A stretch of DNA of 64,000 bases from Macrostomum lignano (GCA_002269645.1 NIVC01000901.1:62001-126000), one strand, 5' to 3'; shown: positions 8,749 to 61,484, counted from the first letter of the stretch. Program-made: numbers and translations. The notes: a model not told the origin generated them from the letters alone.

Positions 8749-8784
<36 letters not shown>

Positions 8785-12729: not shown

Positions 12730-14662
<1,933 letters not shown>

Positions 14663-15225: not shown

Positions 15226-15436
15226 CAGTCTCTTGTAGATCGTAAATAAAGATTTTTTCTAGCAAATAATGTCCATATATAATCAAAGCAAAGTGCACAA
15301 TCTTACCGGTAATATTGTCTGTCCTTTGCGAGAAATTCGATATCTTTATCAACTATAGAAAATTACTTTCTTTCATAAATATATTGAACTGGAGTCCTCT
15401 TTGAAGTTGTTACACAGCATGTGTGTAACCCTTCCG

Positions 15437-15438
15437 GC

Positions 15439-15471
<33 letters not shown>

Positions 15472-15502
15472 TAGTGTCTGCCTATCTGTCTGTCTGTCTG
15501 AG

Positions 15503-15582
<80 letters not shown>

Positions 15583-15586
15583 AGAG

Positions 15587-15657
<71 letters not shown>
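15437..15657 (+). repeat. (CTGT)n microsatellite
   Basis: Direct reading. Confidence 0.96.
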
Positions 15658-15658
<1 letters not shown>

Positions 15659-16379
15659 AAGAGCTGTTCAAAGAGCTGCACAGAACTGCTTACTGGGCAC
15701 GTGAACTCTTTATCTATATATAGCGCGACTTGGGTCCACTTTTACGATCTGTTGGGTGCCGGGAGTGATTCGGTCGAGCGTTCAATGCGACTGACTTTCT
15801 GGGCGACTTTTAGACACCCCTGCCGCTAATCCTACGCGTGCGCCGCGCTAACTGGTTGGTTCGGTTTCAACCAATCAGAATTCAGCTGCCAGTCGTGCGA
15901 CTGGACTCAGCTTTAGTCCAGAAGCAGCGTGGGATTTTGCATATCTAGAAAGCGCACGACCCGCATGCGCTGCTACCCAGGGGCAGAAATTTCGGAGCAG
16001 TCGGAGACACGCAGTAGCTGAGTTGGGGGTTCGGGGAAGAGTGGCGAGCTTTGCTGAGATACAGGTGGGGGTGGGGGGAGGGGTCGAAAATAGATGAGTA
16101 AACAAATCGACAGGATTAAGAGCCGGGGGCAGCCCCCGGTAGGAAGATTATGGGCGCTCAAGAATTGTAGCGCCCACCCAGCCTACACCCGCATTAAGAA
16201 GATTGCTTGGAGGCGAAAAAGCGCGAGAGCAGCGGAGGTGGTAGAACCCGATGCTCTGTCAGATTCTTCTTCAACTTGCCCTGATCTACAGGTGAAAGAG
16301 AAAGCGTTACTCTTAACAATTACTGACAAATTGGGATGAATATCAGAGGAGCATAGCAATTGACTGCCAACTATTTTGA

Positions 16380-17061
16380 GTTGGGTTTAGGATTGGGTTT
16401 AGGATTGGGTTTAGGATTGGGTTTAGGATTGGGTTTAGGATTGGGTTTAGGATTGGGTTTAGGATTGGGTTTAGGATTGGGTTTAGGATTGGGTTTAGGA
16501 TTGGGTTTAGGATTGGGTTTAGGATTGGGTTTAGGATTGGGTTTAGGATTGGGTTTAGGATTGGGTTTAGGATTGGGTTTAGGATTGGGTTTAGGATTGG
16601 GTTTAAGATTGGGTTTAGGATATGGTTTAGGATTGGGTTTGGGATTGGGTTTAGGATTGGGTTTAGGATTGGGTTTAGGATTGGATTTAGGATTGGGTTT
16701 AGGATTGGGTTTAGGATTGGGTTTAGGATTGGGTTTAGGATTGGGTTTAGGATTGGTTTAGGATTGGGTTTGGGATTTGGTTTAGGATTGGGTTTAGGAT
16801 TTGGTTTAGGATTGGGTTTAGGATTGGGTTTAGGATTGGGTTTAGGATTGGGTTTAGGATTGGGTTTAGGATTGGGTTTAGGATTGGGTTTAAGATTGGG
16901 TTTAGGATATGGTTTAGGATTGGTTTGGGATTGGGTTTAGGATTGGGTTTAGGATTTGGTTTAGGATTGGGTTTAGGATTGGGTTTAGGAATGGGTTTAG
17001 GATTGGGTTTAGGATTGGGTTTAAGATTGGGTTTAGGAATGGGTTTAGGATTTGGTTTAGG
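16380..17061 (+). repeat. Telomere-like 12-bp satellite (TTTAGGATTGGG)n
   Basis: About 55 units made of alternating TTTAGG and ATTGGG hexamers. Confidence 0.95.
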
Positions 17062-21905: not shown

Positions 21906-22420
21906 TGCAAGCCTCCCAGATCCTCAGTTGCTGGGCCAGCCTCCCACATCCTCAGTTGCTGGGCCAGCCTCCCAGATCCTCAGTTGCTGGGCCAGCCTCC
22001 CACATCCTCAGTTGCTGGGCCAGCCTCCCAGATCCTCAGTTGCTGGTCAGCCGCCTCCCAGATCCTCAGCTGCTGGGTCAGCCTCCCAGATCCTCCTTTG
22101 CTGGGCCAGCCTCCTAGATCCTCAGTTGCTGGGTCAGCCGCCTCCCAGATCCTCATTTGCTGGGCCAGCCTCCCAGATTCTCAGTTTCTGGGCCAGCCTC
22201 CCAGATCCTCAGTTGCTGGGCCAGCCTCCCAAATCCTCAGTTGCTGCTCCAGCCTACCAGATCCTCAGTTGCTGGGCCAGCCTCCCAGATCTTCAGTTGC
22301 TGCTTCAGCCTACCAGATCCTCAGTTGCTGGGCCAGCCTCCCAAATCCTCAATTGCTGGGCCAGCCTCTCAGATCCTCAATTGCTGGGCCAGCCTCAGCT
22401 CCTCAGTTGCTGGGCCACCA
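21906..22420 (+). repeat. 28-bp minisatellite GCTGGGCCAGCCTCCCAGATCCTCAGTT, array 1 (forward)
   Basis: Direct reading. Confidence 0.95.
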
Positions 22421-24941: not shown

Positions 24942-26524
24942 TTGGCCCAGCAACTGAGGATCTGGGAGGCTGGCCCAGCAACTGAGGATCTGGGAGGCTG
25001 GCCCAGCAACTGAGGATCTGGGAGGCTGGCACAGCAATTGAGGATCTGGGAGGCTGGCACAGCAATTGAGGATCTGGGAGGCTGGCACAGCAATTGAGGA
25101 TCTGGGAGGCTGGCACAGCAATTGAGGATCTGGGAGGCTGGCACAGCAATTGAGGATCTGGGAGGCTGGCACAGCAATTGAGGATCTGGGAGGCTGGCTT
25201 AGCAACTGAGAATCTGGGAGGCTGGCTTAGCAACTGAGGATCTGGGAGGCTGGCCCAGCAACTGAGGATCTGGGAGGCTGGCTTAGCAACTGAGGATCTG
25301 GGAGGCTGGCTTAGCAACTGAGGATCTGGGAGGCTGGCCCAGCAACTGAGGATCTGGGAGGCTGGCATAGCAACTGAGGATCTGGGAGGCTGGCCCAGCA
25401 ACTGAGGATCTGGGAGGCTGGCCCAGAAACTGAGGATCTGGGAGGCTGGCCCAGCAACTGAGGATCTGGGAGGCTGGCACAGCAATTGAGGATCTGGGAG
25501 GCTGGCACAGCAATTGAGGATCTGGGAGGCTGGCTTAGCAACTGAGGATCTGGGAGGCTGGCTTAGCAACTGAGGATCTGGGAGGCTGGCTTAGCAACTG
25601 AGGATCTGGGAGGCTGGCCCAGCAACTGAGGATCTGGGAGGCTGGCTTAGCAACTGAGGATCTGGGAGGCTGGCTTAGCAACTGACACTCTGGGAGGCTG
25701 GCCCAGCAACTGAGGATCTGGGAGGCTGGCCCAGCAACTGAGGATCTGGGAGGCTGGCCCAGCAACTGAGGATCTGGGAGGCTGGCCCAGCAACTGAGGA
25801 TCTGGGAGGCTGGCTTAGCAACTGAGGATCTGGGAGGCTGGCCCAGCAACTGAGGATCTGGGAGGCTGGCCCAGCAACTGAGGATCTGGGAGGCTGGCCC
25901 AGCAACTGAGGATCTGGGAGGCTGGCACAGCAATTGAGGATCTGGGAGGCTGGCACAGCAATTGAGGATCTGGGAGGCTGGCACAGCAATTGAGGATCTG
26001 GGAGGCTGGCACAGCAATTGAGGATCTGGGAGGCTGGCACAGCAATTGAGGATCTGGGAGGCTGGCACAGCAATTGAGGATCTGGGAGGCTGGCCTGCAA
26101 CTGAGAATCTGGGAGGCTGGCTTAGCAACTGAGGATCTGGGAGGCTGGCCCAGCAACTGAGGATCTGGGAGGCTGGCTTAGCAACTGAGGATCTGGGAGG
26201 CTGGCTTAGCAACTGACACTCTGGGAGGCTGGCCCAGCAACTGAGGATCTGGGAGGCTGGCCCAGCAACTGAGGATCTGGGAGGCTGGCCCAGCAACTGA
26301 GGATCTGGGAGGCTGGCCCAGAAACTGAGGATCTGGGAGGCTGGCCCAGCAACTGAGGATCTGGGAGGCTGGCACAGCAATTGAGGATCTGGGAGGCTGG
26401 CACAGCAATTGAGGATCTGGGAGGCTGGCACAGCAATTGAGGATCTGGGAGGCTGGCCTGCAACTGAGAATCTGGGAGGCTGGCCCAGCAACTGCATGAG
26501 GATCTGGGAGGATGGCACAGCAAC
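24942..26524 (-). repeat. 28-bp minisatellite, array 2 (reverse complement of array 1)
   Basis: Unit AACTGAGGATCTGGGAGGCTGGCCCAGC on the plus strand. Confidence 0.96.
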
Positions 26525-27817
26525 TGGGGGTGTATACAGAGTGCTGATGGAGTTACGGAAATTATTCTGCACTCTATGGAACACACAATCGCTCAGATAA
26601 AAGAAATCAGACCAGAAGATTAAAGGCAGCTTCACAAAAATCAATTACAGAATTTCATGTTTACAAAACACACCTGCATTTTTATTCTAACAAAACCCGC
26701 TGGCCGAGCTGAACAAAGTCAGGCATAACTGTCCACTAAGAAAGAGTAGCAGACAATATTACGATTCATAGCAAACATAATAGAGTAAAATGTTACAATA
26801 AAAATGACACACAAAGTTATGAAAACATGCAGGTATTTAAAAAACTGCTACATATCGTGATTGATTTTATTACAATAGAAAACTCATGCTTATTAAACAG
26901 TGCTTAAAGACATACAAGGCAAATGCAGCAGAATTATTAGAACAAGAAATTCCCCCCTCCCAGTCAATTGAAGCGCTCGAGTGTGCGCTTCAGGAAATTG
27001 AAGGCAATTTGTTGGAACTTTTACTCTTCCAGAATCCTTCCTTCTTCTTCATCATTATTAGCGGGAGTACCTGGATTTGCGCACAGACTGGGCTGCGCTG
27101 GCAATTACCGTGGAAAAAAATTTCCTCTGGTAAAAATCTCTTCTCAATCTTCTCCAAAAAAGCAGATCGGCTCGGCCTTGAAGCCAGTTCTCCAGTCTTT
27201 CAATCTAGACTAGAAAATTGCGACAAATTGCCAGAGACAGAGAAATTCGAGTGGCCAGCAGAAGCGACAAGACAAGACTTGAAGCACTTTTGCATTTCTA
27301 AAGACGAGAGAGCACAAGATTTTCTACGCAGTTAAGCGCGAGAAGAGAAATTTAAACAACAAAGCAAATCATACTACTTGTAGCAGCAGAAATTGAATTT
27401 TATAATATTTTTCTGCAAGGGATTTTAAGACTAAGACGAGATGTTGTCAATCGAAAAAATCCTATTTTAGAGAACAAGCGTGCAGTGGACAGAAGTCAAG
27501 CCTAAGAGCGACTGGCGATTTCCTTCTTTCTCTGATCTTTACAACATCGAAAACCTACATGTATAGAATGCTTTTCTCAGGATGTGTTGCTCGATTTCAA
27601 GACATTGCATCGGCATGAACACTTGTCGGACTTACAGGACTAAACATTTCGTTCCTTTGCAGTCTTACCTAAAAAGCTAACTAGCAAAAATATTTTTTTT
27701 CTCTTACGAGTATACACTGTTAACTACTCTTAGTAGAACCACATAGAAATAAAGAGAGCGAATGAAGCAACACAGGAAAACTGATGCGTGTCTTTTTAAA
27801 AAAAACAATAGTTGCAG

Positions 27818-28640
27818 CGGCCCAGCAACTGAGGAGCTGGGACGCTGGCCCAGCAACTGAGGATCTGGGAGGCTGGCCTAGCAACTGAGGATCTGGGAGG
27901 CTGGCCTAGCAACTGAGGATCTGGGACGCTGGCCCAGCAACTGAGGATCTGGGAGGCTGGCCTAGCAACTGAGGATCTGGGAGGCTGGCCCAGCAACTGA
28001 GGATCTGGGAGGCTGGCCCCAGCAACTGAGGATCTGGGAGGCTGGGCCAGCAACTGAGGATCTGGTAGGCTGGCCCAGCAACTGAGGATCTGGGAGGCTG
28101 GCCCAGCAACTGAGGATCTGGGAGGCTGGCCCAGCAACTGAGGATCTGGGAGGCTGGCCCAGCAACTGAGGATCTGGGAGGCTGGCCCAGCAACTGAGGA
28201 TCTGGGAGGCTGGCCCAGCAACTGAGGATCTGGGAGGCTGGCCCAGAACTGGGGATCTGGGAGGCTGGCTCAGCAACTGAGGATCTGGGAGGCTGGCCCA
28301 GCAACTGAGGATCTGGTAGGCTGGCCCAGCAACTGAGGATCTGGGAGGCTGGCCCAGCAACTGAGGATCTGGAAGGCTGGCCCAGCAACTGAGGATCTGG
28401 GAGGCTGGCCCAGCAACTGAGGATCTGGGAGGCTGGCCCAGAACTGGGGATCTGGGAGGCTGGCTTAGCAACTGAGGATCTGGGAGGCTGGCCCAGCAAC
28501 TGAGGATCTGGTAGGCTGGCCCAGCAACTGAGGATCTGGGAGGCTGGCCCAGCAACTGAGGATCTGGGAGGCTGGCACAGGAACTGCGCGAGGATTTTGG
28601 AGGCTGGCCCAGCAACTGAGGATTTGGGAGGCTGGCCCAG
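27818..28640 (-). repeat. 28-bp minisatellite, array 3 (same orientation as array 2)
   Basis: Direct reading; ends about 110 bp from the ALKBH3-like stop codon. Confidence 0.96.
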
Positions 28641-28750
28641 CCGCTCGCTGTCATTTTGATAGAATCACGCCTGTCAGCAACACCCCCACCCACTCTATCA
28701 TCGCGCCAGCTCTCTCGCTTTGCATCCCAGACAGACAACAATCGGCCAGT

Positions 28751-41269: not shown

Positions 41270-41660
41270 AACTTTTGGGGTGGCTGTCTTGCTTAAAAAA
41301 GCAGCCCAACTTTAAAAGTGCATAGCGCTGTTCAGGATTAACTTTGAGATTCGAAATTTTACACGATTGTGTCAAAATAGTTGAAGATTGTGTGTCAAAT
41401 TTGAAGAGGATTGGTAAAACTGGAGCGGCGCTATGTAGGATTTAGTGAAAAAATCGCACATTTTAAGCAGTTTTTTGCACTTTTAGGTAGGAAGACTTGA
41501 GTCTAGGAAATTTTTAGGTAGCCTAAGACATTCTCCATAGTAAGTTTAGGGTGGGTGTAAAGTTTGGTGTAATTTGGTTGAGTGGTTTGGGAGTCCATAG
41601 CGATCAAAATTGTCCACAGACAGACAGACAGAGTTTTGATTTTTATAGTTAGAGATGATG
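41270..41660 (+). mobile_element. Possible non-autonomous Helitron/Helentron-associated element
   Basis: Short GACA run followed by an A/T-rich tail ending TTTATAGTTAGAGAT and an upstream GGGTGGCTG...CAGCCC hairpin; architecture recalls DINE-1/Lep1-like elements. Only one clear copy here. Confidence 0.3.
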
Positions 41661-44891: not shown

Positions 44892-45400
44892 AAATCAGAT
44901 GCTTACTATATGCTCATTAAGCGACGAAGAACAATGAAATTACACTAAAACATGTATCATCGCGGCATGTATGCAGGAAAAAAAATTTTCTAAATTGCTT
45001 TAGTAGAAGCTGAGTAAAATGCAATTTTTCAATCCTTATGGGAATTCCAATGTGTTACCCAGCTTCCAAATCAGATGCTTACTGTATGCTCATTAAGCGA
45101 CAAAAAACAATGAAATTACACTAAAACATGTATCATCGCAGCATGTATGCAGGAAAAAAAGAATTTTCCAAATCGCTTTAGTAGAAGCTGAGTAAAATGC
45201 AATTTTCCAATCCTTATGGGAATTCCAATGTGTTACCTGGCTTCCAAATCAGATGCTTACTGTATGCTAATTAAGCGACAAAGAACAATGAAATTATACT
45301 AAAACATGTATCATTGCGGCGTGTATGCAGGAAAAAAGAATTTTCCAAATCACTTTAATAGAAGCTGAGTAAAATGCAATTTTCCAATCCTTACGGGAAT
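44892..45400 (+). repeat. Three tandem copies of a 176-178-bp AT-rich unit
   Basis: AAATCAGATGCTTACT starts at 44892, 45068 and 45246. Confidence 0.92.
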
Positions 45401-45817
45401 TTATATGTTTAAATAATAAACTTATGTTGAATACAATTTATTGCAAACAAACTCTACAAAATACACGTTGTCAAGAGTAACGAAAGTGATAAACAAATAA
45501 ACCCTTGAAAATAATGTTAAATATGTTGTAGAATTATAGAGTGTAACATTATAAGATAGTTAAAGTTAATAAAATATATTATTATAGCTTTTCTATCATT
45601 TTCATTAGACTCATTTTAGGTCATAATTAAACTCACCATTTTAACAAATCATTTTATTAAAAATAAAGCTATATGAACATAATTTGTGCTTTAATAGACT
45701 TTTTTACCTTTTAAAAACTTGAATAAATTTATTTTATAGCTTTATTGCTTTCAAATTGCCAAAAAACGAATTTTCATAAAACTTGCCCCCAATTTTTGGA
45801 TTTCACCATATGCATAC

Positions 45818-48620: not shown

Positions 48621-49264
48621 ATGGTCACAATTCTGGCGTATGGAGTTACGTCACAGCCCGCGGACACTTTCTACTTAAACAAATTACTAATTAATTAAGT
48701 GATGATCAAACAATTTAGTAGCTACAGATTCCATACAATTAGAAGAGCGCACCTGTATTTCGGTACAATTGCATGTATGACTTACTTAAAAAATTAACAC
48801 ACTATAGCTACTATAATGATCTTTCCCCGTGAATTGATTATGCATGGTTATGCAACCATGCTAATTAACCTACATGTTTGAACCGTTAGATTGACGCATG
48901 AGTGCTGAACATTGTACTGAGAACCTATAGCGAAAGTCAAGCAATTTATGAAAAATTGATGCACTGTTTCAGCAGTGGAAATTCTTTAGAAAATTTTGAG
49001 CGGGTCTCTTCAAATGTTAAATAAAGTAGTGATTCCTTGCAAATACTGTAGCTGCAGCTAACCAGTGTTTAGACAGCTGTGCAACAGGTTTTCAGTTCTC
49101 TTGTTTACCAAAGGTAAACTGAAAGGAAGTTTCTTAGTCAAGTGCTCGAAGTATTTACCTAGTAAACAAGGATATAGGAGCCTACATACACTTAAAACTA
49201 GGAGGAGATGTAAATTCTGAAGAATTCTGAAAAAACTTTGTAATGTACATGTATGCGATGCATC

Positions 49265-49632
49265 TGCTAAAGCCCCTTGGTGCTAAAGCCCCTTGGTGCT
49301 AAAGCCCCTTGGTGCTAAAGCCCCTTGGTGCTAAAGCCCCTTGGTGCTAAAGGCCCTTGGTGCTAAAGCCCCTTGGTGCTAAAGCCCCTTGGTGCTAAAG
49401 CCCCTTGGTGCTAAAGCCCCTTGGTGCTAAAACCCCTTGGTGCTAAAGCCCCTTGGTGCTAAAGCCCCTTGGTGCTAAAGCCCCTTGGTGCTAAAGCCCC
49501 TTGGTGCTAAAGCCCCTTGGTGCTAAAGCCCCTTGGTGCTAAAGCCCCTTGGTGCTAAAGCCCCTTGGTGCTAAAGCCCCTTGGTGCTAAAGCCCCTTGG
49601 TGTTAAAGCCCCTTGGTGCTAAAACCCCTTGG
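49265..49632 (+). repeat. 16-bp minisatellite TGCTAAAGCCCCTTGG, 23 copies
   Basis: Direct reading; highly homogeneous. Confidence 0.97.
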
Positions 49633-49943
49633 CCCTCTCAATATCCGTTATAATCTTTGTTCAGAATGAAAAGCCTGCGCACAGAAATACGAGCGTATGT
49701 TGTCATGCAGAGCGTTCTAACAAATAGATCGATGCTGCAATTCTAACAAAGTATACTTTTGTTAGAACGTTGAACTCCCAATTTGATTGGCTGAGACGGA
49801 ACAGGCCCCTATTTTCAGTTTTAGAGTGGGTATATATCTCCAGTCCATGTAAAGTTAACATCCTGCTCAAGCTGAACGGGAACAATTAATTATAGCCATC
49901 CTCCGATTTTTGAGCACACACCACACAAAATCGTTATTGAGTT

Positions 49944-51197
49944 ATGTCGCACAGCCGATTTTGGTTAATGCTTTCTGTTACCATGGTAATACTCAATCAA
50001 TCTGTTCATTCCAAGAGAGATTATCAAATAGAATTGATGAAGTATCTGAAGAACAACATCACGGACTACAGTCCGATAGTTCGGCCAGTGTTGGACCCGG
50101 ACCAGGTGATGCTATTCAATTTCACCTTTCTGCTCAGCCAAATTGTAGCTGTGGACAGCGCTAAGCAGACTGTCAAGATATCCGCTTACCTTCAGGCTGG
50201 CTGGACCGAGGAGCGGCTGGTCTGGGATCCGGCCGATTTTGGAAACGTGACTGTCATGGACTGGGACTCCAGTCAAATCTGGTTCCCCGTGATTCTCATT
50301 TACAATGGCGTAGGCGACAACCAGCTGCTCAAGCCGCAGTTTCCCATAATCCTCACTTCCAGTTCGCCCAGGGCAACAGTTGCAGAGACAACCTGAGAGC
50401 AGGAATGGGAGTTCTCCTGCAAATTCGACATGAGCCTATTTCCATTCGACAAGCACGTCTGCGACATGGAACTGTTCTGCAGCGACCAAGGTCGGGGTCA
50501 CCATCTTCTCCAGCCTGCCATTGGCAACCCAATGAACAATGAGCTGGCGATTTACGTCGTTAATAGCGAGTGGAGACTATTGAATCTGAGCACATTCGTG
50601 CATCTGAGGTACTACGAGATGCTCAAGGGCCAGCCAAAGTTGCCGCTGCCAAGCTACGTTATTCGCATGACTGTCGAGCGCGTGTCCAACTACTATCTGC
50701 TGAACGTGGTGGCTCCCCTGCTGCTGCTAACGCTGCTCCAGTTGCTGATTTTCATCGTGCCAGTCGAGTCCGGAGAGAAGCTGGGCTTCGGCATCACCAT
50801 CATGCTGAGCTACACGGTGTTCCTGCTGCTGCTGGACGGCCTGCTGCCCAAGTCGCAGTCAATGCCGGCCGTGGCGTCCTTCATCACGGCGGCCATGGTG
50901 CTGTCGTCGCTGTCCCTGCTGCTCACGTCCGTCGTGATTCGATTCCACTTCGCTGCGGACACCCAGTCGATGCCGCCGTGTCTCCGTCTCGTGTTCGTGA
51001 CCTGCCTGGGACGCCTGCTGTGCACCTCCACCAGCGACTCGAAGGTGGACGTCGGTGTCGAGGGCGCTCATCGACCGAGCCGCTCCGACTGGGTGGTGGC
51101 GGCGCTGGCCCTGGAGAGGCTGATGGCTTTGGTTGGCAGCGTTGCCATCGTTGTCATCTTTCTTGGGTATCTGCTGGCTCCGTTCGCAACTCACTGA
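49944..51197 (+). CDS. Intronless divergent Cys-loop ligand-gated ion channel subunit (nAChR-like, non-alpha) interrupted by one in-frame TGA at 50394-50396; possible pseudogene, read-through gene or sequencing error
   Basis: ORFs 49944-50396 and 50430-51197 are in the same frame, separated only by the TGA. Signal peptide, SPIVRPV, WFPVILIYN (loop A), C-x13-C loop CKFDMSLFPFDKHVC, four TM helices, SGEKLGFGITIML at M2, MX and MA-like helices. Confidence 0.9.
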
Positions 51198-52310
51198 GCT
51201 GCACCTCCAAGCGCAGCTTTGGGCAGAACTTCACTATTCAAAATTAAATTTAACTTCGCACCAAGTCGTTAATTGGTCGCAAACTTTAAATTGTCAATTT
51301 AGCAATACGTATTTTCAATTCGAAACCTAATATGCAGACCCTGGGAAGTACTTTCCCCGATCAAGAAGTTTATTAGAATTGAAAAAAAGTTTCTCTAAAA
51401 TTTTGAGCTTATATTTGTTAATTGTTCGACACATTTTTAGCCACTAGCTGCTATTGTGGTGAATCACTCTTATGCCTACATTATACCTAATGTTTCTTTT
51501 TATCTTATAAACATTTTATAACAATTTGCTATATCCTGTTCTTACTTTTACTGAATCATTTCTGCAGGCTATTTTAGTTTTTTATGTTGTTCAGTAATTT
51601 ATTCTTGGTCACATGGACACCTCAGTAATTTTATGACGAATCGAAGCTACTATAGTGAGTTGCAGTAAGTTGTAAGTTGCTGCGATCGTGCGGAATAGAC
51701 AATAATCTCTGCGAATAGAAAAAATAAGCACATTTTGAAGGAATTGATTTAACAAAATTAATAATTGCCAACCGGCGAAGGTCGAATTACTGCATGCCCA
51801 TTCCGCCGACTCCCCTGAGCAGGCACACAAGCGTGCGGATACGTACGCAGCCATAGCTACGCACAGGCACACACTCACACAGGAGTTATAGCGGCTTATT
51901 GCACGAGCAGAGCCAAGCCGAGATTCCAATTTAGCCACAAATGTAAGTGACTGCAGTTGGAATCGAACCTGGGCCACTGGCCGCTTGATTATTCGAATTC
52001 AAACAAACAATCTTTTAGTTTAAATTCACGTTCAAATTTTCCCGGCCACAGGTAAATTAATTAATCCTTTCACTTTTCGCAAGGCTGCTAGAGGCTGCTA
52101 AGGAAATGGGGTTCCGTCCAATAGAAAGTCTGTGCCAGAAAAATACAATTTCTCGAGTACTCTAGATAGTAGCTATGCAGAGACTTCTATAGCTATCTAG
52201 AGCTGCTAAAAATTGAGTCAGGAATTCTTTGATGCTGGTCACTGTAAGCCAGTCGTTAGAAGGTTTAATTCAGCCTTTACCATGCGTCACAGTCAGAGAC
52301 AAGAACAGGA

Positions 52311-52853
52311 GCTTTAGCACCAGGGGCCTCAGCACCAGGGGCTTTAACACCAGGGGCTTTAGCACCAGGGGCCTCAGCACCAGGGGCTTTAGCACCAGGG
52401 GCTTTAGCACCAGGGGCTTTAGCACCAGGGGCCTCAGCACCAGGGGCTTTAGCACCAGGGGCTTTAGCACCAGGGGCCTCAGCACCAGGGGCTTTAACAC
52501 CAGGGCTTTAGCACCAGGGGCCTCAGCACCAGGGGCTTTAGCACCAGGGGCTTTAGCACCAGGGACCTCAGCACCAGGGGCTTTAACACCAGGGGCTTTA
52601 GCACCAGGGGCCTCAGCACCAGGGACTTTAACACCAGGGGCTTTAGCACCAGGGGCCTCAGCACCAGGGGCTTTAGCACCAGGGGCTTTAGCACCAGGGG
52701 CCTCAGCACCAGGGGCTTTAACACCAGGGGCTTTAGCAGCAGGGGCTTTAGCACCAGGGGCTTTAGCACCAGGAGGCTTTAGCATCAGGGCCGCCAGCAC
52801 CAAGGGGGCGCCCAACACCAGGGGCGCCAGAGCACCAGGGGCGCCAGCACCAC
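52311..52853 (-). repeat. 15-bp minisatellite (reverse complement TGCTAAAGCCCCTGG)
   Basis: Plus strand reads CCAGGGGCTTTAGCA repeats; degenerates after about 52790. Confidence 0.96.
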
Positions 52854-53835
52854 GGGTGTCAGCTTCAACCATTGATTTTGTTTGTGTCAGCCGTGTGAAC
52901 CAAATCGAGAAGCTCTGCTAGATAATAACTTAAAAGAATTTTAGCATCCAAAGTCTCAAAGTTTTACCCGAACACAAAGCGCACTGAAGGCCATGGTTAA
53001 AAATAATCTTATTATAGCAAAAGCGAAGACGATAAGCAGTGCCATATCGTATATTGATGAGTAAGAGGTGCAAAAAGCATTTACACTAAGACGCTGTAAT
53101 CTGCAAGCTGTTATTCCTATTTTAAATACAGGCCCACAGCTTCCTGACTAGACTAGACTGGACGAGGAAGTCAGTTAAATTGAAGAATAGCGGAATTTAC
53201 GGCGACAGCCAGAGGATCTAAAGTATAAAAAATTGTTGGAGATGTTTGAATTTGTCAAAATTACCAAAGTAGATGAAGCATTATAGTTATCATCATAGGA
53301 AGCAATATTTTATAGTAATTAATTTGTAATAAATTCATGGAAATTACCATTATAAAGAAAGTCGCAAGCGCTCTACTAAAAGTAGTCAAAACAGGATATG
53401 CGAGAATTTTACTACATTGAACCCTATATACTGATCATAAGTCTGTTGAAGTAGCTATTTTTTCACAAACTGCAGCCTTTTGAATGATTGACAAAAACTT
53501 TTTTAGAGAATGAATAAAACTTCTAGAGATGCTTCTGTCTGGTGATTAGATATCAACTATAAGCACTGAAAGCATTCATTGCAATAGCTTGCAAAAAGCA
53601 AAATAAATCAAGGCATTCTTGTGCACTTAAACTGCAGCTTCTAAACAATCGTCAAGAAAGAACCGCTAGAAGCTACCGTTGTGGTCAGGATGCAACGCTC
53701 AATATAAAGTACTTGGCAGCACAGAAGGTGAGATTTTGACAGATTAAGAGCGAGAGTCGTACACGTCCTCATAAAACCGGTAACTTCTGGCGGTTGCTAT
53801 CGTCAAATTAGTTCAGACAAATACCACCGTTATAG

Positions 53836-55807
53836 TTACGAACTCTGCTGAAATGGCACCAAGCAGAACAGCATGTCGGAGTTCAACAGACGAAACCCGG
53901 ACCCAGGATTGGTGATGACCACTCGCTTAGTAGTCTGCAGCTCAACGGTGCTGTAGCTGTCGCGATACCGGTACACCCCCAGCGGGAGGATGCCGTGCGA
54001 CTTGAACACGCCGGTGAACAGGTCGCCGAATGTGCCCTGCTCGTGCGGCCTCAGTCGCGGATCCAGCATGGACAATTGCATCGCTCGACATCGATGCCGA
54101 TTAGCTTGAATCTCCGGCGTCTCCTCCGTGCCATCCAGGTTGAGCCCCTCGGCCATGAGCACCTCCATCTCGGGCGTGGCGCCGCCAGTCACCAGTGTGC
54201 GAATCAGCGTCATGGCGTTCATGTTGTGAAACACGGTTGACATCAGCGAGTCCAACACCCCGGCCGTGAACGCGTTGCCGCAGGCGTACGGCTGCGAGTT
54301 GTATATCTCCTCTTCATCGGCATCATCGTCCTCCTGATCGAGGAATTGAATATTCTTACCGACGAAGATCTCGGTAAGAATGGGCACCGCCACCTTGGCC
54401 AGTAGGGACTTCGATTTGGCGTCTTTGCTCTGAAAGGCTTGCAATTGAGCCTGCACACTGGTGTCGAGACCTTCGGCAAATGACATTGCTTTGATGTTGA
54501 GCGTGCACAACACCACTTCCTTGTCCATTAAGTAGGGATCCACCTGGTCCTTCCACCTCGACTTGGCGCTCAGTATGACGCACATGTCGCACAGGTTGAT
54601 CTTGGCGCTCCGCAGGATCACGCGGTTCATTGGCGAACCGGGAAACATGTAGATTTTTGGGAAGTTCTTCAACGAACCCCATTCGCGTTGAAGGAAGTCG
54701 AGATTGCCAATAAAAACGATTGGCCTTAGCTCGTTCAGACGGAAGTTGCTGGCCCGCAGAGGCATCACGAAGCTGCGCAGTCCGATTAAAGGCGAGTCGC
54801 TATCGGCGAACACGATGACAACGTAGTGCTGCCTGAGGTCAAGTCTTGCAACGCTATTAGGCGTCAGCATAACGTCCTCAAAGTTCTTGTCCGGACACCA
54901 GTGGAACATGCCAGTGAGATCAAAGTACTCCACGGACTCTTTTCTCGGTTCGACAAATTCGCCAAAATTGTCCTCTGAGCCGAACTCGGCCTCCTTCAGT
55001 GTGGCGAGCGCCTTGTTAGACACGACTTGAATCTCTGGCCGACGAACGTTGGCACTGTTGCCGCGAAGTCTGGTCAACTCGTGCGTCTCCCCGCAGCAGT
55101 GCCCGGAATCGACTCCGGGAGCACCTGCCGAATCCTCAGCGCGTGTACAGCTGCACGCCTTGATCTGCTTCGGCTCGGTAACGTCGCTGTGACACTTCCG
55201 ACAGTACAGGTAGGCTCGTCGCACCCCCTCCTGCGAGTCGGCGATGAAAAATCCGTGGCAGCCGTGATAGATGACGGTGTCCCTGCCGCTGGGGTTGATT
55301 GACAGAAATCTGTCGCCGTCATCGCTTTTGTCCTCCATCGCAAAGAGGAGAATCCCCAGTTTGTTGAAGCTGACTTCCACTGCGTCCTGGAATGGCATGC
55401 CGACAAATGAGTCGCTGAAGTACTCGGAGTAGATCTCCATTGCGCTGCCAATCTGGTAGTCCTTCTCCCAGGTGTTGGCGCGAACTGATTTGCACATGGC
55501 TCTGGTAGAGAACAGGTTCGCCATCAGAGTAGAAAAGCCAGGCGCCAGGCAGCTCTGCGCCAGGAAGCCCTGCTTGAGCTCGGCGAGGCAAACGCATTCG
55601 TCACCGAATCGCCAATCCCAGTTCGGTATGTTCAGCAAGTAGCCTTTGTTGTGATACTGCAGCAGCTGGATGATGCAGCGAGTTGTTGGCGAGGCATTTT
55701 TTATCGAAATGACACGCATGATGTTTGAAGCGTCCTCTGCGTCCGGGTCCTCGGTGTGCTTGTTGCCGAGGACGATCACGGCTGAGGCTGACTCAAGATC
55801 GACTCGT
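53836..55807 (-). CDS. slo (KCNMA1-like): Slo1/BK-type channel, exon 3 (rest of RCK1, RCK2, Ca2+ bowl)
   Basis: taacag|A acceptor; DPDAEDASNIMRVISIKN, AQSCLAPGFSTLMANLF, CRKCH, QFLDQEDDDADEEE-IYNSQPYACG. The three exons sum to 3363 nt = 1120 aa plus stop. Confidence 0.95.
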
Positions 55808-56889
55808 CTGTTAAGGGGGGGGGGGTTTCATTGGTGGATGTGAATTTCTTAGTGCTGAGATTAAAATCTATCGACTTTGATAAAGACAAACAAAGAAATA
55901 TTCAAACAAAAGGATAGTTCTCAGGATTCCTGTTTCGAAAATATGCTGTACTTTTTCTTGACTTGATCCGTCTCCAATAACTACATCTTTTCCCATTCTA
56001 CGAGCGTGGACCTGAAAAATCGTTAAATGTGTCGCTTTAGAAGGCGTGGTTCCCGGAACTGAATGCACATTGTACGAAACGCTACCACCATAACCGTCTG
56101 AACCGAATTAAAATATTTCAACTATGACGGATAACATAACAAAGTAGACTGGAAAAGATGTGCAGTACTTTTAAAAAACTTTAAATCGGTACACCTTCAA
56201 TCAACAAGGTTAATTAATAATTCAAGACATTATTAATTTTGTATACCAGCGTATTTTTGCTTACAACCAGTTTTGCAACTATCTAATGCATTGACAGTAG
56301 CAGTTCAGTCTGCATAGCTTGTATAGCGATGGAACAGGATTCCAGCAGTGTAATTAGGCCCACGTAAACCATGGGTTTAGAATCCACAGCAGCCAATTCA
56401 AGGAAAAAGTACAATTGGAAATATTCCCCTATTAGAAGCAAAAATCGGTCAGACGCAGGTTTGAATGATATGCCTTTTGGATTGATTTCCCCCCTCCGAG
56501 GGAGTAGTTTGAAGCTTACATCCTCCACTATGCGTCGTTTTTCATTTGCTCTGACTAGAAGCAATTCTAAACCCAAGACGCTCTATGGGGGCGGCGGCTT
56601 CCAAACCAGGTAAGCGCCCATTAGTATCCGCGTGGTAACTGCAGCTGTCGCTTGTAATTGGAGCTACATGTATTGTAGAACTACGAGTACCTAGAATTAG
56701 GCATGCCATTTGCGCATACCAACAAGCTATAAGTTCCGGTAAGGTTTGCCTTTCTTTAACTTCAAAGCATAATTTATTCTTCTTTCACATTCTGTGCACT
56801 CATAGATCAATATATTGATTACTACGTGCGCTTGCTTTTCTAGCTCTTGATGTCCTGCTTTGATAATTTAGGTAGAATTGGGTTGACTT

Positions 56890-57622
56890 AGGTGAGGAGT
56901 GGGGTGAGGAGTGGGGTGAGGAATAAGGTGATGAGTAGGGTGAGGAGTGGGGTGAGGAGTGGGGTGAGGAATGGGGTGATAAGTAGGGTGAGGAGGGGGT
57001 GAGGAGTGGGGTGAGGAATGGGGTGATGAGTGGGGTGAGGAGTGGGGTGAGGAGTGGGGTGAGGAATGGGGTGATGAGTAGGGTGAGGAGTGGGGTGAGG
57101 AGTGGGGTGAGGAATGGGGTGAGGAATGGGGTGATAAGTAGGGTGAGGAGGGGGTGAGGAGTGGGGTGAGGAATGGGGTGATGAGTGGGGTGAGGAGTGG
57201 GGTGAGGAGTGGGGTGAGGAATGGGGTGATGAGTAGGGTGAGGAGTGGGGTGAGGAGTGGGGTGAGGAATGGGGTGATGAGTGGGGTGAGGAATGGGGTG
57301 ATGAGTGGGGTGAGGAATGGGGTGATGAGTAGGGTGAGGAGGGGGTGAGGAGGGGGTGAGGAGTGGGGTGAGGAATGGGGTGATGAGTGGGGTGAGGAGT
57401 CGGGTGAGGAGTCGGGTGAGGAGTCGGGTGAGGAGTGGGGTGAGGAGTGGGGTGAGGAGTGGGGTGATGAGTGGGGTGAGGAGTGGGGTGAGGAGTCGGG
57501 TGAGGAGTGGGGTGAGGAATGGAGTGAGGAGTGGGGTGAGGAGTGGGGTGAGGAGTCGAGTGAGGAGTGGGGTGAGGAGTGCGGTGAGAAGTGAAGTGAG
57601 AAGTGAGGTGAGGAGTGGGGTG
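56890..57622 (+). repeat. G-rich 12-bp minisatellite GGGGTGAGGAGT in Slo intron 2
   Basis: Direct reading. Confidence 0.95.
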
Positions 57623-57815
57623 TGAGATAGGGTATGGAGTACTTAGGCCTGAAAGTATTAATCGTGAAGTGGATGATGGTTGGGGATAGAAAGGTTGACT
57701 TCGACTTGGACTATGCGGTTGTTTAGATGGCTCAGAGAGAAATGGAATTTCCAAGCAAATGCTTGCAGTTTGTGAATCTCAAAGTACTCAAAGCAAGGTT
57801 TGCCCAGTCACTCAC

Positions 57816-58240
57816 TGGCAATCAGCCGGACTCAGCACCGTCCCGGTAAAGTACACAACTCGACCGAAGTTTCTCTTCAGCAATCCTTGAAACTCCAAGT
57901 TCGGCTCCTTCTTGTTGATGCAAACCACTTCAACGTCAGTCTCCTGCCGGTCCTCGTGCAGAAAGTCGCTGAGGAAGCTCTCAATTGAGTCGAATGTCAC
58001 GGCGCCGCAGACGATGACGTGCTTCCTGCCGTGCTCTTTCTTGTAGCTGCCGGCGTACGGGCTCCTGCTGGTGATGATCTCAGCAATCTCCGGGATGAAG
58101 GAGGCGAAAATACCCAAGGCGAACATGATGTAGATTGAGATAAAGAACTTGCCCCAGCTGGTCTTGGGCGAGATATCGCCAAAACCAACTGTGCTCATTG
58201 TCACGATGGTGAAATACAGACAGTCTCCGAAGCTTATCGG
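57816..58240 (-). CDS. slo (KCNMA1-like): Slo1/BK-type channel, exon 2 (pore, S6, start of RCK1)
   Basis: ttgcag|CCG acceptor; CLYFTIVTMSTVGFGDISPKT, FASFIPEIAE, RKHVIVCG, DFLHEDR; CA|gtgagt donor. Confidence 0.93.
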
Positions 58241-58374
58241 CTGCAAATTAGATTGGTATCACGTGACGTCAGCATTATTATGTCTCGACTGTGTTATGGA
58301 GTAGAGCCTTACTATGAAAGTGCGTGGATTAGCACCTGCACTCTACATGTAGCTTGAGGGGTTCCATTCAAGGT

Positions 58375-59230
58375 TTAATAAGCACCCCTCTAGATGTAAT
58401 AAGCGTCTCTATAGTGTAATAAGCACCTGTCCAGGAGTAATAAGCGTCTCTATAGTGTAATAATCACCCGTACCCCTCTAGGTGTAATAAGCGTCTCTAT
58501 AGTGTAATAAGCACCTCTCTAGGTGTAATAAGCGTCTCTATAGTGTAATAAGCACCTGTCCAGGTGTAATAAGCGTCTCTATAGTGTAATAAGCACCTGT
58601 CCAGGTGTAATAAGCGTCTCTATAGTGTAATAAGCGCCACTCTAGGTGTAATAAGCGTCTCTATAGTGTAATAAGCGTCTCTATAGTGTAATAAGCGTCT
58701 CTATAGTGTAATAAGCGTCTCTATAGTGTAATAAGCACCTGTCCAGGTGTAATAAGCGTCTCTATAGTGTAATAAGCGTCTCTATAGTGTAATAAGCGTC
58801 TCTATAGTGTAATAAGCACCTGTCCAGGTGTAATAAGCGTCTCTATAGTGTAATAAGCGCCACTCTAGGTGTAATAAGCGTCTCTATAGTGTAATAAGCG
58901 TCTCTATAGTGTAATAAGCGTCTCTATAGTGTAATAAGCGTCTCTATAGTGTAATAAGCACCTGTCCAGGTGTAATAAGCGTCTCTTTAGTGTAATAAGC
59001 GCCACTCTAGGTGTAATAATCGTCTCTATAGTGTAATAAGCGCCACTCTAGGTGTAATAAGCGTCTCTATAGTGCAATAAGCACCTGTCCAGGTGTAATA
59101 AGCGTCTCTATAGTGTAATAAGCGCCACTCTAGGTGTAATAAGCGTCTCTATAGTGTAATAAGCACCTCTCTAGGTGTTGTAAGTGTCCCTCTAGGTGTA
59201 GTTAGCGCCACTTCAGGTGTAATAAGTATC
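58375..59230 (+). repeat. 20/21-bp modular minisatellite with constant GTGTAATAAGC core in Slo intron 1
   Basis: Core followed by GTCTCTATA, ACCTGTCCAG, GCCACTCTAG or ACCTCTCTAG. Confidence 0.94.
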
Positions 59231-59887
59231 AGTTAGCTCGTGACTGATTAGGTAATATACAGTGTAATATGCAGCTAGTGTATTATACACTGCATAGTGA
59301 GTTACTGCCCTGCAAAGTCAATCCTTCTTCAACCGCGACAATCAACGGTTTACACATGATTAAAGGGTTTGGGCGACGGATGGAAAGGAGGTTCTAAGAA
59401 AGTACGCTTCTTTCTATTCATTTTTTCGCTAGTTTTTTTCTCACTCTCCTCACTCTCTCGTCTCGAGCGCTCTATCAAGTTCAACTCTTAGTAAGACAGC
59501 GCATCTTTGCCTTCCCTCCTCCCCATGTTTTATTAGTTTCCACGAGCTATTTGAAAAGGCATCCATTACTCTCCTGCAAAATTGTCCGGTAACCAGTGCG
59601 GCAGAGAGGGGCTTGGTAACTGGGACAATTTATATTGCACCGGCGGCTAAATAACATCAGAAGCTGCGCTTAAGGTTTGCACTTTTTTTCGTTCAACTGG
59701 CTGCCGATAAGTCGCTTGCAGATTAGGAAAAAAACTTTTTTTACTTGGCGGCGGTCTGGAAGCAATAAATCATGTGCATTTTTTCCCCTGGCTAATACCT
59801 GCAGGTAAACTTATCCACTGAGGACAGAAATGGCCCAATAAAGACCGTCTGGGTTCCGCTGCTGGATGCAATGAGTATTGGCTATGT

Positions 59888-60069
<182 letters not shown>

Positions 60070-60518
60070 AAGTCAGAAGGATGCTTCAGTAAGCAGAATG
60101 TTGATTGGAGCAATGAAGAATTTTTTCATTAGCTAAGTGAAAGCTGCTTGAGGCCCAAGGCGGCGTCAGGGCAGGAGAGTCCATCGTAAAGAAAATCCAA
60201 TCATTTTCCAAGCTGCATTTTCAGCTGTTTGCTTCCACAAGCTCACCATGGCTGCCCCAGAGCATCTTTGCGCATAATTGGATTTTCTGGCAACCCAGCC
60301 TCTAAAAAGTGCACCTCCTTCTTCACTTCCTCTGCCTTGGGAGTAAACAGAAGCAGAAATGCAAGTAGATCATTTGTACGACGTCCTACCATTTGGAATA
60401 TTTAAGTTCTGTTTTCCTTTTTTACCCATCGCGGTTTGCGTAGCGTTGGTTTTTATGCAAATCGGGGTGTCAGCGTCCTCCAACGATAATAAATTACGCA
60501 CAAAACTTTGCAACTCAC

Positions 60519-61484
60519 ATTCGGATTGCTGTAGTCACTCTGCGGATCTCCCGTGTTCTCAAACAGGTGCGTGACCCCGGCTCCGATAAGCCAGACGCTC
60601 AGGAAGATTGTGATCATCTGCAGGGAGCGGATGATGGCTCCAGACTTGACGGCGCTGACGCTCTGCAGCACGTCTGGCAGCGTCATGACTCTCAGGCTGC
60701 GCATGAACCGGAGTCCCAGCCAGGACTGGCTGAGGCACAGGCTCACGAAGGCTGGCGGTACAGTGCAGTAGTCCACCACCGAGTAGAGCTCCAGCCAGAA
60801 CCAGAACTTGTCCTGCGCAGCCAGAAACCTGATGCAGAAAAACAACAAGAAGACGGTATTGAAAGCCAGGTCAGCCTGACTGAGTGGATTCCGCGACCAG
60901 GGCGTGCAGTTCTCAGTGGACCCGATTAGCTGGTTGGCCTCAATGATGTAGATTCCTGCCGACGAGATGCTCAGAACAAAGACTAGCACGGCTAGGATTC
61001 GACCGCTGACGCTTTGTGCGCTGATCAAATCGCTGGCCCAGTCGCGAATGGCTGAACTGCCGCTCGCTACGGAGCTGCCAGTTCGAGTGGCGTTGGGCGC
61101 GATTGCGACGCCGTCTTGTTGCTGCTGCTGCTGCTGCGAGCTTGTTGCTGCGGCTCCTGGCGCGATAAGCGCGCCCCCGCTGCTAGCGCTTCCGCTTCTC
61201 AGTGACTTCTGCTGCTCGTGCACCTCGTACTGATGATGATGGTTGCCGCCAGTCCCGGGGCGACCGCGCTGACGCCGTTGAAAGAGTTTGATCAGCCGGT
61301 TAACTACTCGGTAGAGCACGAGAAAGAGCAGTCCGCCCAGGAAGGCCAGGGCTGTCGAGGCCAGATGGTAATGCCATCGGCGCTCCGTGCAGGCTTGGAC
61401 GCTGCCAGGGGCTGTCGGCAGGACGGGAGCGGACCTGGTTGCAACGTTTGACGTATCGTTGAAAGCGGCAATTGTTGCGACCAT
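60519..61484 (-). CDS. slo (KCNMA1-like): Slo1/BK-type Ca2+- and voltage-activated K+ channel, exon 1 (S0-S5)
   Basis: S0-like WHYHLASTALAFLGGLLFLVL, RDWASDLISAQSVSGRIL, S4 WLGLRFMRSLRV, HLFENTGDP; AAT|gtgagt donor (phase 0). Start ATG at 61484 is the first in-frame ATG and is inferred. Confidence 0.9.

What the first reader, a model, noticed from the sequence alone, without database searches (positions are those of the whole stretch)
49944..51197. Intronless orphan Cys-loop receptor lacking the acetylcholine-binding signature
Seen in sequence: single-exon pentameric-channel subunit with an intact Cys loop and a cation-type GEK motif before M2, but no vicinal Cys-Cys in loop C (YYEMLKGQPKLPLPSY), no loop B Trp (ELFCSD in place of KFGSW), loop D Trp replaced by Tyr, and a very short M3-M4 loop. 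Established: cephalopod chemotactile receptors are divergent nAChR-derived channels that lost the ACh site and sense other compounds. Inference: this may belong to an independent lineage-specific expansion of chemosensory Cys-loop channels. It could equally be an ordinary non-alpha accessory subunit.
Basis: partly seen in the sequence, partly recalled or inferred. Interest (0 to 1): 0.7.

Follow-up and report, generated by a model that had tools for sequence, protein, structure and literature searches.

The report
Flatworm orphan nicotinic-like channel, stop-interrupted
This is a real, intron-free gene for a nicotinic-receptor-like ion-channel subunit from a small flatworm (Macrostomum) clade that has lost the usual acetylcholine-binding residues, but this copy carries a premature stop codon and is probably a very young pseudogene or null allele.

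Summary
Window 49944-51197 (+) is one continuous 417-codon frame encoding a Cys-loop channel subunit (Pfam LBD 1.6e-26, TM 2.2e-16; best solved relative human alpha7 nAChR, 2e-46).

The frame is broken once. The TGA at 50394-50396 (codon 151, before the Cys loop) falls where all four close relatives have Trp, which implies a TGG->TGA change. The rest of the gene shows no clear decay.

The only close relatives (45-50% identity) are Macrostomum lignano proteins. Three intact intronless copies plus a fragment lie there in a 9-kb tandem array. Window plus M. lignano copies form a clade (100/100 bootstraps) with no supported sister group. The clade profile scores alpha7 above beta/delta/5-HT3; cephalopod chemotactile receptors are not among the best 60 solved matches.

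Verdict: an alpha7-derived orphan subunit of a small flatworm-restricted, tandemly duplicating clade, here with a nonsense codon. A lineage-specific expansion is supported only modestly. A chemosensory role is untested. Orphan, intronless, tandem nAChR-like genes are already well known in lophotrochozoans.

The parts
49944..51197 (+). Whole single-exon coding frame of the nAChR-like subunit (417 codons plus terminal TGA), interrupted by one internal TGA
50394..50396 (+). In-frame TGA (codon 151), in the column where all four M. lignano paralogs have Trp (WRREFEF motif). This implies TGG->TGA. It lies 8 codons before the first Cys of the Cys loop
49944..50012 (+). Predicted signal peptide (MSHSRFWLMLSVTMVILNQSVHS). 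This is inferred from the hydrophobic N-terminus and a helix in the model
   Evidence: inference
50187..50189 (+). Loop D position: Tyr82 where 83/110 relatives have Trp
50418..50462 (+). Cys loop C159-C173 (CKFDMSLFPFDKHVC), intact with FPFD
50469..50486 (+). Loop B ELFCSD: no aromatic residue at the position that is Trp in 93/110 relatives
50610..50657 (+). Loop C YYEMLKGQPKLPLPSY: first Tyr kept, Met-Leu in place of the vicinal Cys-Cys, loop 4 residues longer than in alpha7
50682..50951 (+). M1-M3 (residues 247-336), including SGEK and M2 (LGFGITIMLSYTVFLLLLDG, 9' Leu, -1' Glu). 72-77% identical to the M. lignano paralogs, with the SGEK-M2 stretch identical to three of them
50952..51083 (+). 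Short M3-M4 intracellular loop (about 45 residues; residues 364-378 low confidence in the model)
51084..51194 (+). MA/M4 helix (residues 381-417)
49831..49837 (+). TATA-like TATATAT 113 nt upstream of the ATG, with an inverted CCAAT (GATTGGCT) about 50 nt further up. A plausible promoter, weak evidence
51243..51248 (+). ATTAAA 46 nt after the stop: a plausible polyadenylation signal, weak evidence

Best explanation
The locus encodes a subunit of a pentameric, cation-selective ligand-gated channel of the nicotinic receptor family.

It belongs to a small clade known only from Macrostomum flatworms. The clade descends from alpha7-like nicotinic subunits, is intronless, and duplicates in tandem. 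It keeps the pore, the Cys loop and the gating interface, but has lost the core of the acetylcholine pocket: the loop B Trp, the loop D Trp, the loop C Cys-Cys, and by the alpha7 alignment also the second loop C Tyr. Members therefore most likely do not bind acetylcholine in the canonical way. They either respond to another, unknown ligand or serve as non-binding partners in heteromers (inference).

This particular copy carries a TGG->TGA nonsense change at codon 151, before the Cys loop and all membrane helices. As assembled it can only give a 150-residue secreted fragment. It is a very recently inactivated pseudogene or a null allele of an otherwise constrained gene.

Shown: family, clade, residues, the stop and its alignment to Trp. 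Inferred: loss of ACh gating, cation selectivity, recency of inactivation.
For: - Family: Pfam LBD and TM domains; alpha7 is the best solved relative by sequence and by fold.
- Clade: the only relatives above 30% identity are M. lignano proteins. Monophyly was 100/100 bootstraps, and the four M. lignano copies excluded the window copy in 92/100.
- Tandem intronless array in M. lignano: L001 7863-9188, 10001-11305, 12783-14105, plus a fragment at 16333-16674.
- Lost pocket residues in all five members; loop A Tyr, first loop C Tyr and the -1' Glu are kept.
- Constraint: M1-M3 averages 79% pairwise identity against 41% for the ECD, and the SGEK-M2 stretch is identical in the window and three of the four M. 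lignano copies. dN/dS is about 0.25 overall and about 0.1-0.15 in M1-M3.
- The stop aligns to Trp in all four paralogs.
- There are no other lesions. Only 19 of 133 positions that are invariant in the other four copies are changed here, against 8-17 for the others. GC3 is 0.73.
- TGA is an ordinary stop in this genome. The gene itself ends in TGA where its relatives end. The only 'stop' in the neighbouring BK gene hit is a GTGAGT splice donor. Rfam found no SECIS.
Against: - A single substitution could be an assembly error or a heterozygous variant. No reads were available to check this.
- With only one lesion, the pseudogene call rests on one base.
- dS is saturated, so constraint on the terminal branch cannot be measured.
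- No expression data were found for any clade member.
- Loss of ACh sensitivity is inferred from residues, not measured. Loop A Tyr and the first loop C Tyr remain.
- The source organism was not pinned down. The BK exon found no Macrostomum protein.
Confidence: 0.6

Rival explanations
1. The gene is functional in the animal. The internal TGA would then be a sequencing or assembly error, or one haplotype of a polymorphism. The locus would encode a working orphan channel subunit like its M. lignano relatives.
For: - The frame is otherwise intact over 417 codons.
- The SGEK-M2 stretch is identical to three M. lignano paralogs, and all family-invariant residues are kept.
- GC3 is high.
- TATA-like and ATTAAA signals are present.
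Against: Substitution errors that create exactly a stop at a conserved Trp are uncommon in polished assemblies (general knowledge). No reads or second haplotype could be examined. Neither ORF half was found in the gene-position index.
Confidence: 0.3
2. Clade members are structural or accessory subunits. They would co-assemble with canonical ACh-binding alpha subunits and contribute no binding site, in the way accessory-position subunits do in vertebrate receptors.
For: - There is no Cys-Cys, and both principal-face and complementary-face Trp are lost.
- The pore sequence is almost invariant across paralogs, which fits co-assembly constraints.
- The cation-type -1' Glu is kept.
Against: - The clade profile resembles alpha7/alpha-type subunits (165-180 bits) more than beta/delta/gamma/epsilon (114-142 bits).
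- 93 of 110 related proteins keep the loop B Trp and 83 keep the loop D Trp, so losing both is unusual among these relatives.
- Fast-evolving ECDs in tandem paralogs (41% identity) fit diversifying ligand sites at least as well.
Confidence: 0.3
3. The clade is an independent flatworm analogue of cephalopod chemotactile receptors: nAChR-derived channels expressed in sensory cells and gated by environmental compounds.
For: - It shares a syndrome with the cephalopod receptors as described in PMC11526382 and PMC10338036: nAChR descent, lost ACh signature residues and lineage-specific duplication.
- Here the ECD diverges (41%) while the pore is held constant, and M. lignano has a tandem array.
Against: - No expression or ligand data exist.
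- Only about five paralog types were found, against up to 26 in octopus (PMC11526382).
- Many lophotrochozoan nAChR-like expansions exist with no sensory role shown (PMC6896357).
- This copy is broken.
Confidence: 0.15
4. The TGA is decoded as Trp by a variant code, as selenocysteine, or by programmed readthrough, or it is removed by a tiny intron.
For: The stop sits exactly where relatives have Trp. A GT...AG pair spanning 24 nt could in principle excise it (read).
Against: - The same gene terminates at TGA where relatives end.
- The BK gene shows normal GT-AG introns and no in-frame TGA.
- No SECIS or any other Rfam hit was found.
- A 24-nt intron would delete 8 residues that align residue for residue with the paralogs.
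Confidence: 0.03

Closest known systems
Macrostomum lignano hypothetical proteins PAA92206.1 (BOX15_Mlig033226g1; UniRef A0A267H1R5), UPI0007A21CAE, A0A1I8GG98, and unannotated neighbours on NIVC01000059.1
   Same: 45-50% identity over the full length. Shared features are intronlessness, the same short M3-M4 loop, the same lost pocket residues, and an SGEK-M2 stretch identical in L001 a-c (P0002 differs at one position). Monophyletic with the window gene in 100/100 bootstraps.
   Different: The M. lignano copies are intact and have Trp where the window has TGA. They sit in a tandem array next to a GIPC-like gene. The window copy is solitary, next to a BK channel gene, so there is no synteny. 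The window copy branches outside the four M. lignano copies (92/100).
Alpha7-type neuronal nicotinic acetylcholine receptor subunits (e.g. human CHRNA7, PDB 7KOO/7EKI)
   Same: Best sequence match (2e-46; clade profile 180 bits) and best fold match (TM 0.75-0.85). Also shared: the Cys loop, the GEK selectivity motif, 9' Leu, loop A Tyr and the first loop C Tyr.
   Different: About 26-28% identity. The window gene has no loop B Trp, no loop D Trp and no vicinal Cys-Cys. Its loop C is 4 residues longer. Its M3-M4 loop is about 45 residues rather than more than 100. ACh gating is therefore doubtful (inference).
Cephalopod chemotactile receptors (octopus CRT1, squid CRB1)
   Same: nAChR-derived cation channels that lost the ACh signature residues and expanded in one lineage (PMC11526382, PMC10338036).
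   Different: A different phylum and a much smaller family here. They are not among the best 60 solved-structure matches to the clade profile, whereas alpha7 is first. No direct tree with CR sequences was built. No sensory expression or ligand is known for the flatworm clade.
Alpo4 (Alvinella pompejana) and the expanded intronless, tandem nAChR-like genes of molluscs and annelids
   Same: Orphan lophotrochozoan nAChR-like subunits, many intronless and in tandem arrays, some lacking the loop C Cys-Cys, with unknown ligands (PMC6896357, PMC10338036).
   Different: Alpo4 keeps the key aromatic binding residues (PMC10338036), whereas this clade has lost both Trp. There is no supported phylogenetic link to any mollusc or annelid group (best candidate sister in 22/60 bootstraps).

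Membership tests
Cys-loop pentameric ligand-gated ion channel superfamily | Extracellular ligand-binding beta-sandwich domain followed by a four-helix membrane domain | tested here: met
   Pfam PF02931 at 1.6e-26 and PF02932 at 2.2e-16, both above gathering scores. The AF2 model shows the strands plus four membrane helices.
Cys-loop pentameric ligand-gated ion channel superfamily | Two Cys separated by 13 residues, with the F/YPxD motif | tested here: met
   C159-KFDMSLFPFDKHV-C173. Both Cys, the Pro and the Asp are invariant in alignment A3.
Cys-loop pentameric ligand-gated ion channel superfamily | An uninterrupted reading frame giving a full-length subunit | tested here: not met
   TGA at codon 151 (50394-50396) lies before the Cys loop.
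Nicotinic acetylcholine receptor family (cationic branch) | Closer to nAChR subunits than to 5-HT3 or anionic receptors | tested here: met
   alpha7 scores 180 bits against 116 for 5-HT3A with the clade profile. All top hits are nAChR.
Nicotinic acetylcholine receptor family (cationic branch) | Cation selectivity motif (Glu at -1', GEK) and 9' Leu gate | tested here: met
   SGEKLGFGITIMLSYTVF. The -1' Glu is present in all five clade members and in 105/110 relatives. Selectivity itself was not measured.
Nicotinic acetylcholine receptor family (cationic branch) | Aromatic box for ACh: loop B Trp, loop D Trp, loop A Tyr, two loop C Tyr | tested here: not met
   The loop B Trp column is S/I/S/A/N in the clade (W in 93/110 others). 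The loop D Trp column is Y/L/I/Y/F (W in 83/110). Loop A Tyr and the first loop C Tyr are kept. The second loop C Tyr aligns to Leu.
Nicotinic acetylcholine receptor family (cationic branch) | Alpha-type vicinal Cys-Cys in loop C | tested here: not met
   Met226-Leu227 in the window. None of the five clade members has Cys-Cys, against 67/110 relatives.
Nicotinic acetylcholine receptor family (cationic branch) | Gating by acetylcholine | not testable with these tools
   This needs electrophysiology.
Macrostomum-type orphan nAChR-like clade (not named in the literature searched) | Monophyly with the M. lignano paralogs | tested here: met
   100/100 NJ bootstraps, 115 sequences, 420 columns. In 1.84 billion representatives, only M. 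lignano entries score at clade level.
Macrostomum-type orphan nAChR-like clade (not named in the literature searched) | Shared derived characters: intronless, short M3-M4 loop, invariant M2, lost Trp B and Trp D | tested here: met
Cephalopod chemotactile receptors | Placement in the cephalopod CR clade | tested here: inconclusive
   Solved CRs are absent from the best 60 PDB matches while alpha7 leads. No CR sequences were available for a joint tree.
Cephalopod chemotactile receptors | Expression in sensory epithelium and activation by hydrophobic or bitter compounds | not testable with these tools
   No expression or functional data were found.
Processed retrogene | Intronless copy with a poly(A) remnant and flanking target-site duplications | tested here: not met
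   It is intronless, but there is no poly(A) tract. The only flanking direct repeat (48979-49001 / 51386-51408, 78%) is at chance level. All clade members are intronless, so any retroposition would be ancient.

The most novel reading that the evidence does not exclude
Macrostomum flatworms have independently turned an alpha7-like nicotinic receptor into a small family of non-cholinergic, possibly chemosensory, ligand-gated cation channels. This would parallel cephalopod chemotactile receptors. The family would be turning over by tandem duplication and by recent loss, with this TGA-bearing copy as one example.
Probability: 0.15. Interest if true: 0.6.

Novelty: new member of a known kind. Interest (0 to 1): 0.3.

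Why it matters
If clade members prove to be gated by something other than acetylcholine, they would be a second, independent case of a neurotransmitter receptor recruited for another ligand. The first such case is the cephalopod chemotactile receptors. Macrostomum lignano is a tractable model with transgenesis and RNAi (general knowledge).

As it stands, the locus mainly adds one member, a broken one, to the already well-documented pattern of orphan, intronless, tandemly duplicated nAChR-like genes in lophotrochozoans. It also shows that M. lignano annotation misses at least two intact paralogs.

Tried and rejected
- TGA read as Trp: rejected. The gene's own terminator is TGA, and the apparent stop in the BK exon-2 hit is the splice donor CAG|GTGAGT.
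- Selenocysteine: no SECIS or any other Rfam family at gathering threshold in the window.
- A 24-nt GT..AG mini-intron over the stop: rejected, because the 8 residues align column for column with the paralogs.
- Retrogene hallmarks: no poly(A) tract, and only a chance-level 23-nt flanking repeat.
- Second copy in the window: tblastn with 12 relatives finds only 49944-51197.
- Synteny with the M. lignano array: none. The neighbours are GIPC-like there and BK here.
- Shared promoter motifs with M. lignano copies: only a 9-nt overlap around an inverted CCAAT.
- Exact look-ups of the two ORF halves, and of P0001 and P0002, in the gene-position index: not on record.
- Organism identification through the BK channel: the 647-aa exon gave nothing above about 51% identity and no Macrostomum hit. 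A 145-aa exon query returned nothing at all, which wasted the third search. The best clue is a non-coding dispersed repeat shared with M. lignano at 84-91%.
- High-scoring long proteins in the representatives search (bivalves, hemichordate): these are multi-domain fusions whose scores add up, not closer relatives.
- NJ sisters P0254 and P0250: only about 25% identical, and recovered in 22/60 bootstraps. They are treated as long-branch neighbours.
- Terminal-branch dN/dS: not attempted, because dS is saturated at 1.5-2 or more.
- Literature: no paper was found on this clade or on gene Mlig033226.

Full report
**1. The observation**

Window 49944-51197 on the + strand reads as one frame of 417 codons, from an ATG to a terminal TGA.
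- It carries both Pfam domains of Cys-loop receptors: Neur_chan_LBD at 1.6e-26 and Neur_chan_memb at 2.2e-16.
- Its best match among solved structures is human alpha7 nAChR at 2.4e-46.
- An AlphaFold model built on a 12-sequence alignment has mean pLDDT 80, with the expected beta-sandwich and membrane helices. Its best structural match is again alpha7 (Foldseek 1.6e-30, TM 0.75-0.85).

This is far beyond chance.

- The Cys loop is C159-C173 with FPFD.
- SGEK precedes M2, with a 9' Leu.
- Loop C is YYEMLKGQPKLPLPSY, with Met-Leu where alpha subunits have Cys-Cys.
- Loop B is ELFCSD, without the Trp.
- Loop D has Tyr82 in place of Trp.
- The M3-M4 loop is about 45 residues.

I took 110 other nAChR-like proteins from an exhaustive profile search and counted residues in these columns.

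| Column | 110 relatives | Five clade members |
|---|---|---|
| Loop B Trp | W in 93 | S/I/S/A/N |
| Loop D Trp | W in 83 | Y/L/I/Y/F |
| Loop C Cys-Cys | CC in 67 | none |
| Loop A Tyr | Y in 71 | kept in all five |
| First loop C Tyr | Y in 82 | Y in four, F in one |
| -1' Glu | E in 105 | kept in all five |

**2.

The frame has one internal stop, TGA at 50394-50396 (codon 151), eight codons before the first Cys of the Cys loop. In the alignment with its closest relatives this codon sits in a column that is Trp in all four (motif WRREFEF; the window has *EQEWEF). The simplest reading is a single TGG->TGA transition.

Alternatives were checked and set aside:
- The gene's own terminator is TGA, at the point where relatives end.
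- The neighbouring BK gene has canonical GT-AG introns and no in-frame TGA. The one apparent stop there is the donor CAG|GTGAGT.
- Rfam finds no SECIS.
- A 24-nt GT..AG excision would remove eight residues that align one to one with the paralogs.

As assembled, the gene can only yield a 150-residue N-terminal fragment.

**3. Relatives**

A word-indexed search of 5.8 billion proteins gave two hits at 50% and 45% identity, with everything else below 33%. One of the two is Macrostomum lignano PAA92206.1.

An exhaustive HMMER search with the three-sequence profile against 1.84 billion representatives found clade-level scores only for M. lignano entries (P0002, P0133, P0139). The next scores, from long bivalve and hemichordate proteins, are sums over fused tandem domains.

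The M. lignano contig NIVC01000059.1 carries a head-to-tail array within 9 kb: three intact intronless paralogs (L001 7863-9188, 10001-11305, 12783-14105) and a truncated fourth (16333-16674). Only the second is annotated.

I built a neighbour-joining tree of 115 sequences over 420 columns:
- The window gene plus four M. lignano paralogs are monophyletic in 100/100 bootstraps.
- The M. lignano four exclude the window copy in 92/100.
- No sister group is supported (best 22/60).

The clade profile scores alpha7 at 180 bits, alpha3/alpha4/alpha1 at 165-175, beta/delta/gamma/epsilon at 114-142 and 5-HT3A at 116. Cephalopod chemotactile receptors and Alpo4 are not among the best 60. The clade therefore looks like a derivative of alpha7-like subunits rather than of beta-type subunits. 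It is independent of the cephalopod receptors as far as I could test; I had no CR sequences for a joint tree.

**4. Constraint**

- Among the five clade members, M1-M3 averages 79% identity and the ECD 41%. The stretch SGEKLGFGITIMLSYTVFLLLLDG is identical in the window and three M. lignano copies.
- Nei-Gojobori dN/dS is about 0.25 overall and 0.1-0.15 in M1-M3, but dS is saturated at 1.5-2 or more, so the terminal branch cannot be isolated.
- The window copy changes 19 of 133 positions that are invariant in the other four. The others change 8-17, and the window copy is the outgroup.
- It has no frameshift or second stop, GC3 is 0.73 in an AT-rich neighbourhood, and it has TATA-like and ATTAAA signals.

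If the TGA is real, inactivation is very recent. It could also be a segregating null allele or an assembly error. Only reads can tell.

**5. Context and source**

The gene is solitary in the window. It lies about 2.6 kb from the 3' end of a convergently oriented slowpoke/BK channel gene, whose exons are at about 61391-60519, 58249-57806 and 55806-53836 on the - strand.

One BK exon is 647 codons long. Introns are therefore sparse in this genome, which weakens 'intronless' as a special mark.

The window is packed with micro- and minisatellites. Two of them, reverse complements of each other, bracket the receptor gene.

A non-coding dispersed repeat at 41510-41653 matches M. lignano L001 at 84-91%. 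Together with the receptor's relatives, this points to Macrostomum or something very close. However, the BK exon found no Macrostomum protein, so the species is not settled.

**6. Mechanism, best reading**

The gene encodes a cation-selective pentameric channel subunit with intact gating elements: the Cys loop, the pre-M1 Arg, the M2-M3 prolines, 9' Leu and the -1' Glu. Its orthosteric pocket can no longer hold acetylcholine by the usual cation-pi contacts.

The clade's function is one of two options, both inferred:
- gating by an unknown ligand;
- a non-binding partner in heteromers.

This copy is null as assembled.

**7. Comparison with what is known**

Orphan nAChR-like genes that are intronless, tandemly arrayed and divergent are well documented in molluscs and annelids (PMC6896357). 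Alpo4 is a solved orphan without the Cys-Cys (PMC10338036). Cephalopod chemotactile receptors are nAChR derivatives gated by hydrophobic compounds, with up to 26 genes in octopus (PMC11526382). Flatworm LGIC surveys list M. lignano nAChR-like genes without singling out this clade (PMC6881066), and I found no paper on it.

The finding is therefore a new, and broken, member of a known kind. The chemosensory idea remains open but untested.

**8. Verdict**

Interest is modest (0.3). The most novel reading not excluded is an independent flatworm analogue of chemotactile receptors, at about 0.15 probability.

Noticed in passing
window 49265-49632 and 52306-52856: Two minisatellite arrays bracket the receptor gene. 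One has a 16-nt unit (TGCTAAAGCCCCTTGG) and the other a 15-nt unit (CAGGGGCTTTAGCAC). They are near reverse complements of each other. The long ORFs on both strands at 52229-52921 are just this repeat.
   Followed up: partly
window 21910-22417 vs 24943-26526 and 27819-28641: A 28-nt minisatellite occurs once in one orientation and twice as its reverse complement. This is the same inverted-array pattern as around the receptor gene. The first 36 kb of the window is largely micro- and minisatellites, which accounts for many of the long ORFs listed there.
   Followed up: no
window 53836-61391 (- strand): A slowpoke/BK calcium-activated potassium channel gene in only three visible exons (about 61391-60519, 58249-57806, 55806-53836). 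One exon is 647 codons long. The introns carry 12-nt and 20/41-nt minisatellites (56891-57622, 58376-59226). The best protein matches are only about 48% identical (molluscs, arthropods).
   Followed up: partly
window 41510-41653; L001 17537-17664 and 18478-18512: A non-coding dispersed repeat is shared with a Macrostomum lignano contig at 84-91% identity. In M. lignano it is split by about 800 bp. It is probably a transposon or SINE-like fragment, and it is the best clue to the source organism.
   Followed up: partly
L001 (M. lignano NIVC01000059.1) 7863-9188, 12783-14105, 16333-16674: Two intact intronless paralogs and one truncated copy in the M. lignano tandem array are not among the called genes at this locus. 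Only the middle copy (PAA92206.1) is.
   Followed up: yes
L002 (ENA ERZ26273219, ctg29322) 10001-11242 and 14106-15611: An unidentified eukaryotic contig carries two adjacent intronless divergent Cys-loop genes. One is 413 aa with a short M3-M4 loop and no loop C Cys-Cys; the other is 501 aa. The first is only about 25% identical to the window protein and is a weak NJ neighbour.
   Followed up: no
window 49712-49770: A 13-nt perfect palindrome pair, CGTTCTAACAAA...TTTGTTAGAACG, lies about 180-230 nt upstream of the ATG, just after the upstream minisatellite. Its significance is unknown.
   Followed up: no
window 44892-45401: A 178-nt tandem repeat, 2.9 copies at 93% identity, lies in the AT-rich (about 30% GC) gene-poor stretch upstream of the receptor gene.
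   Followed up: no
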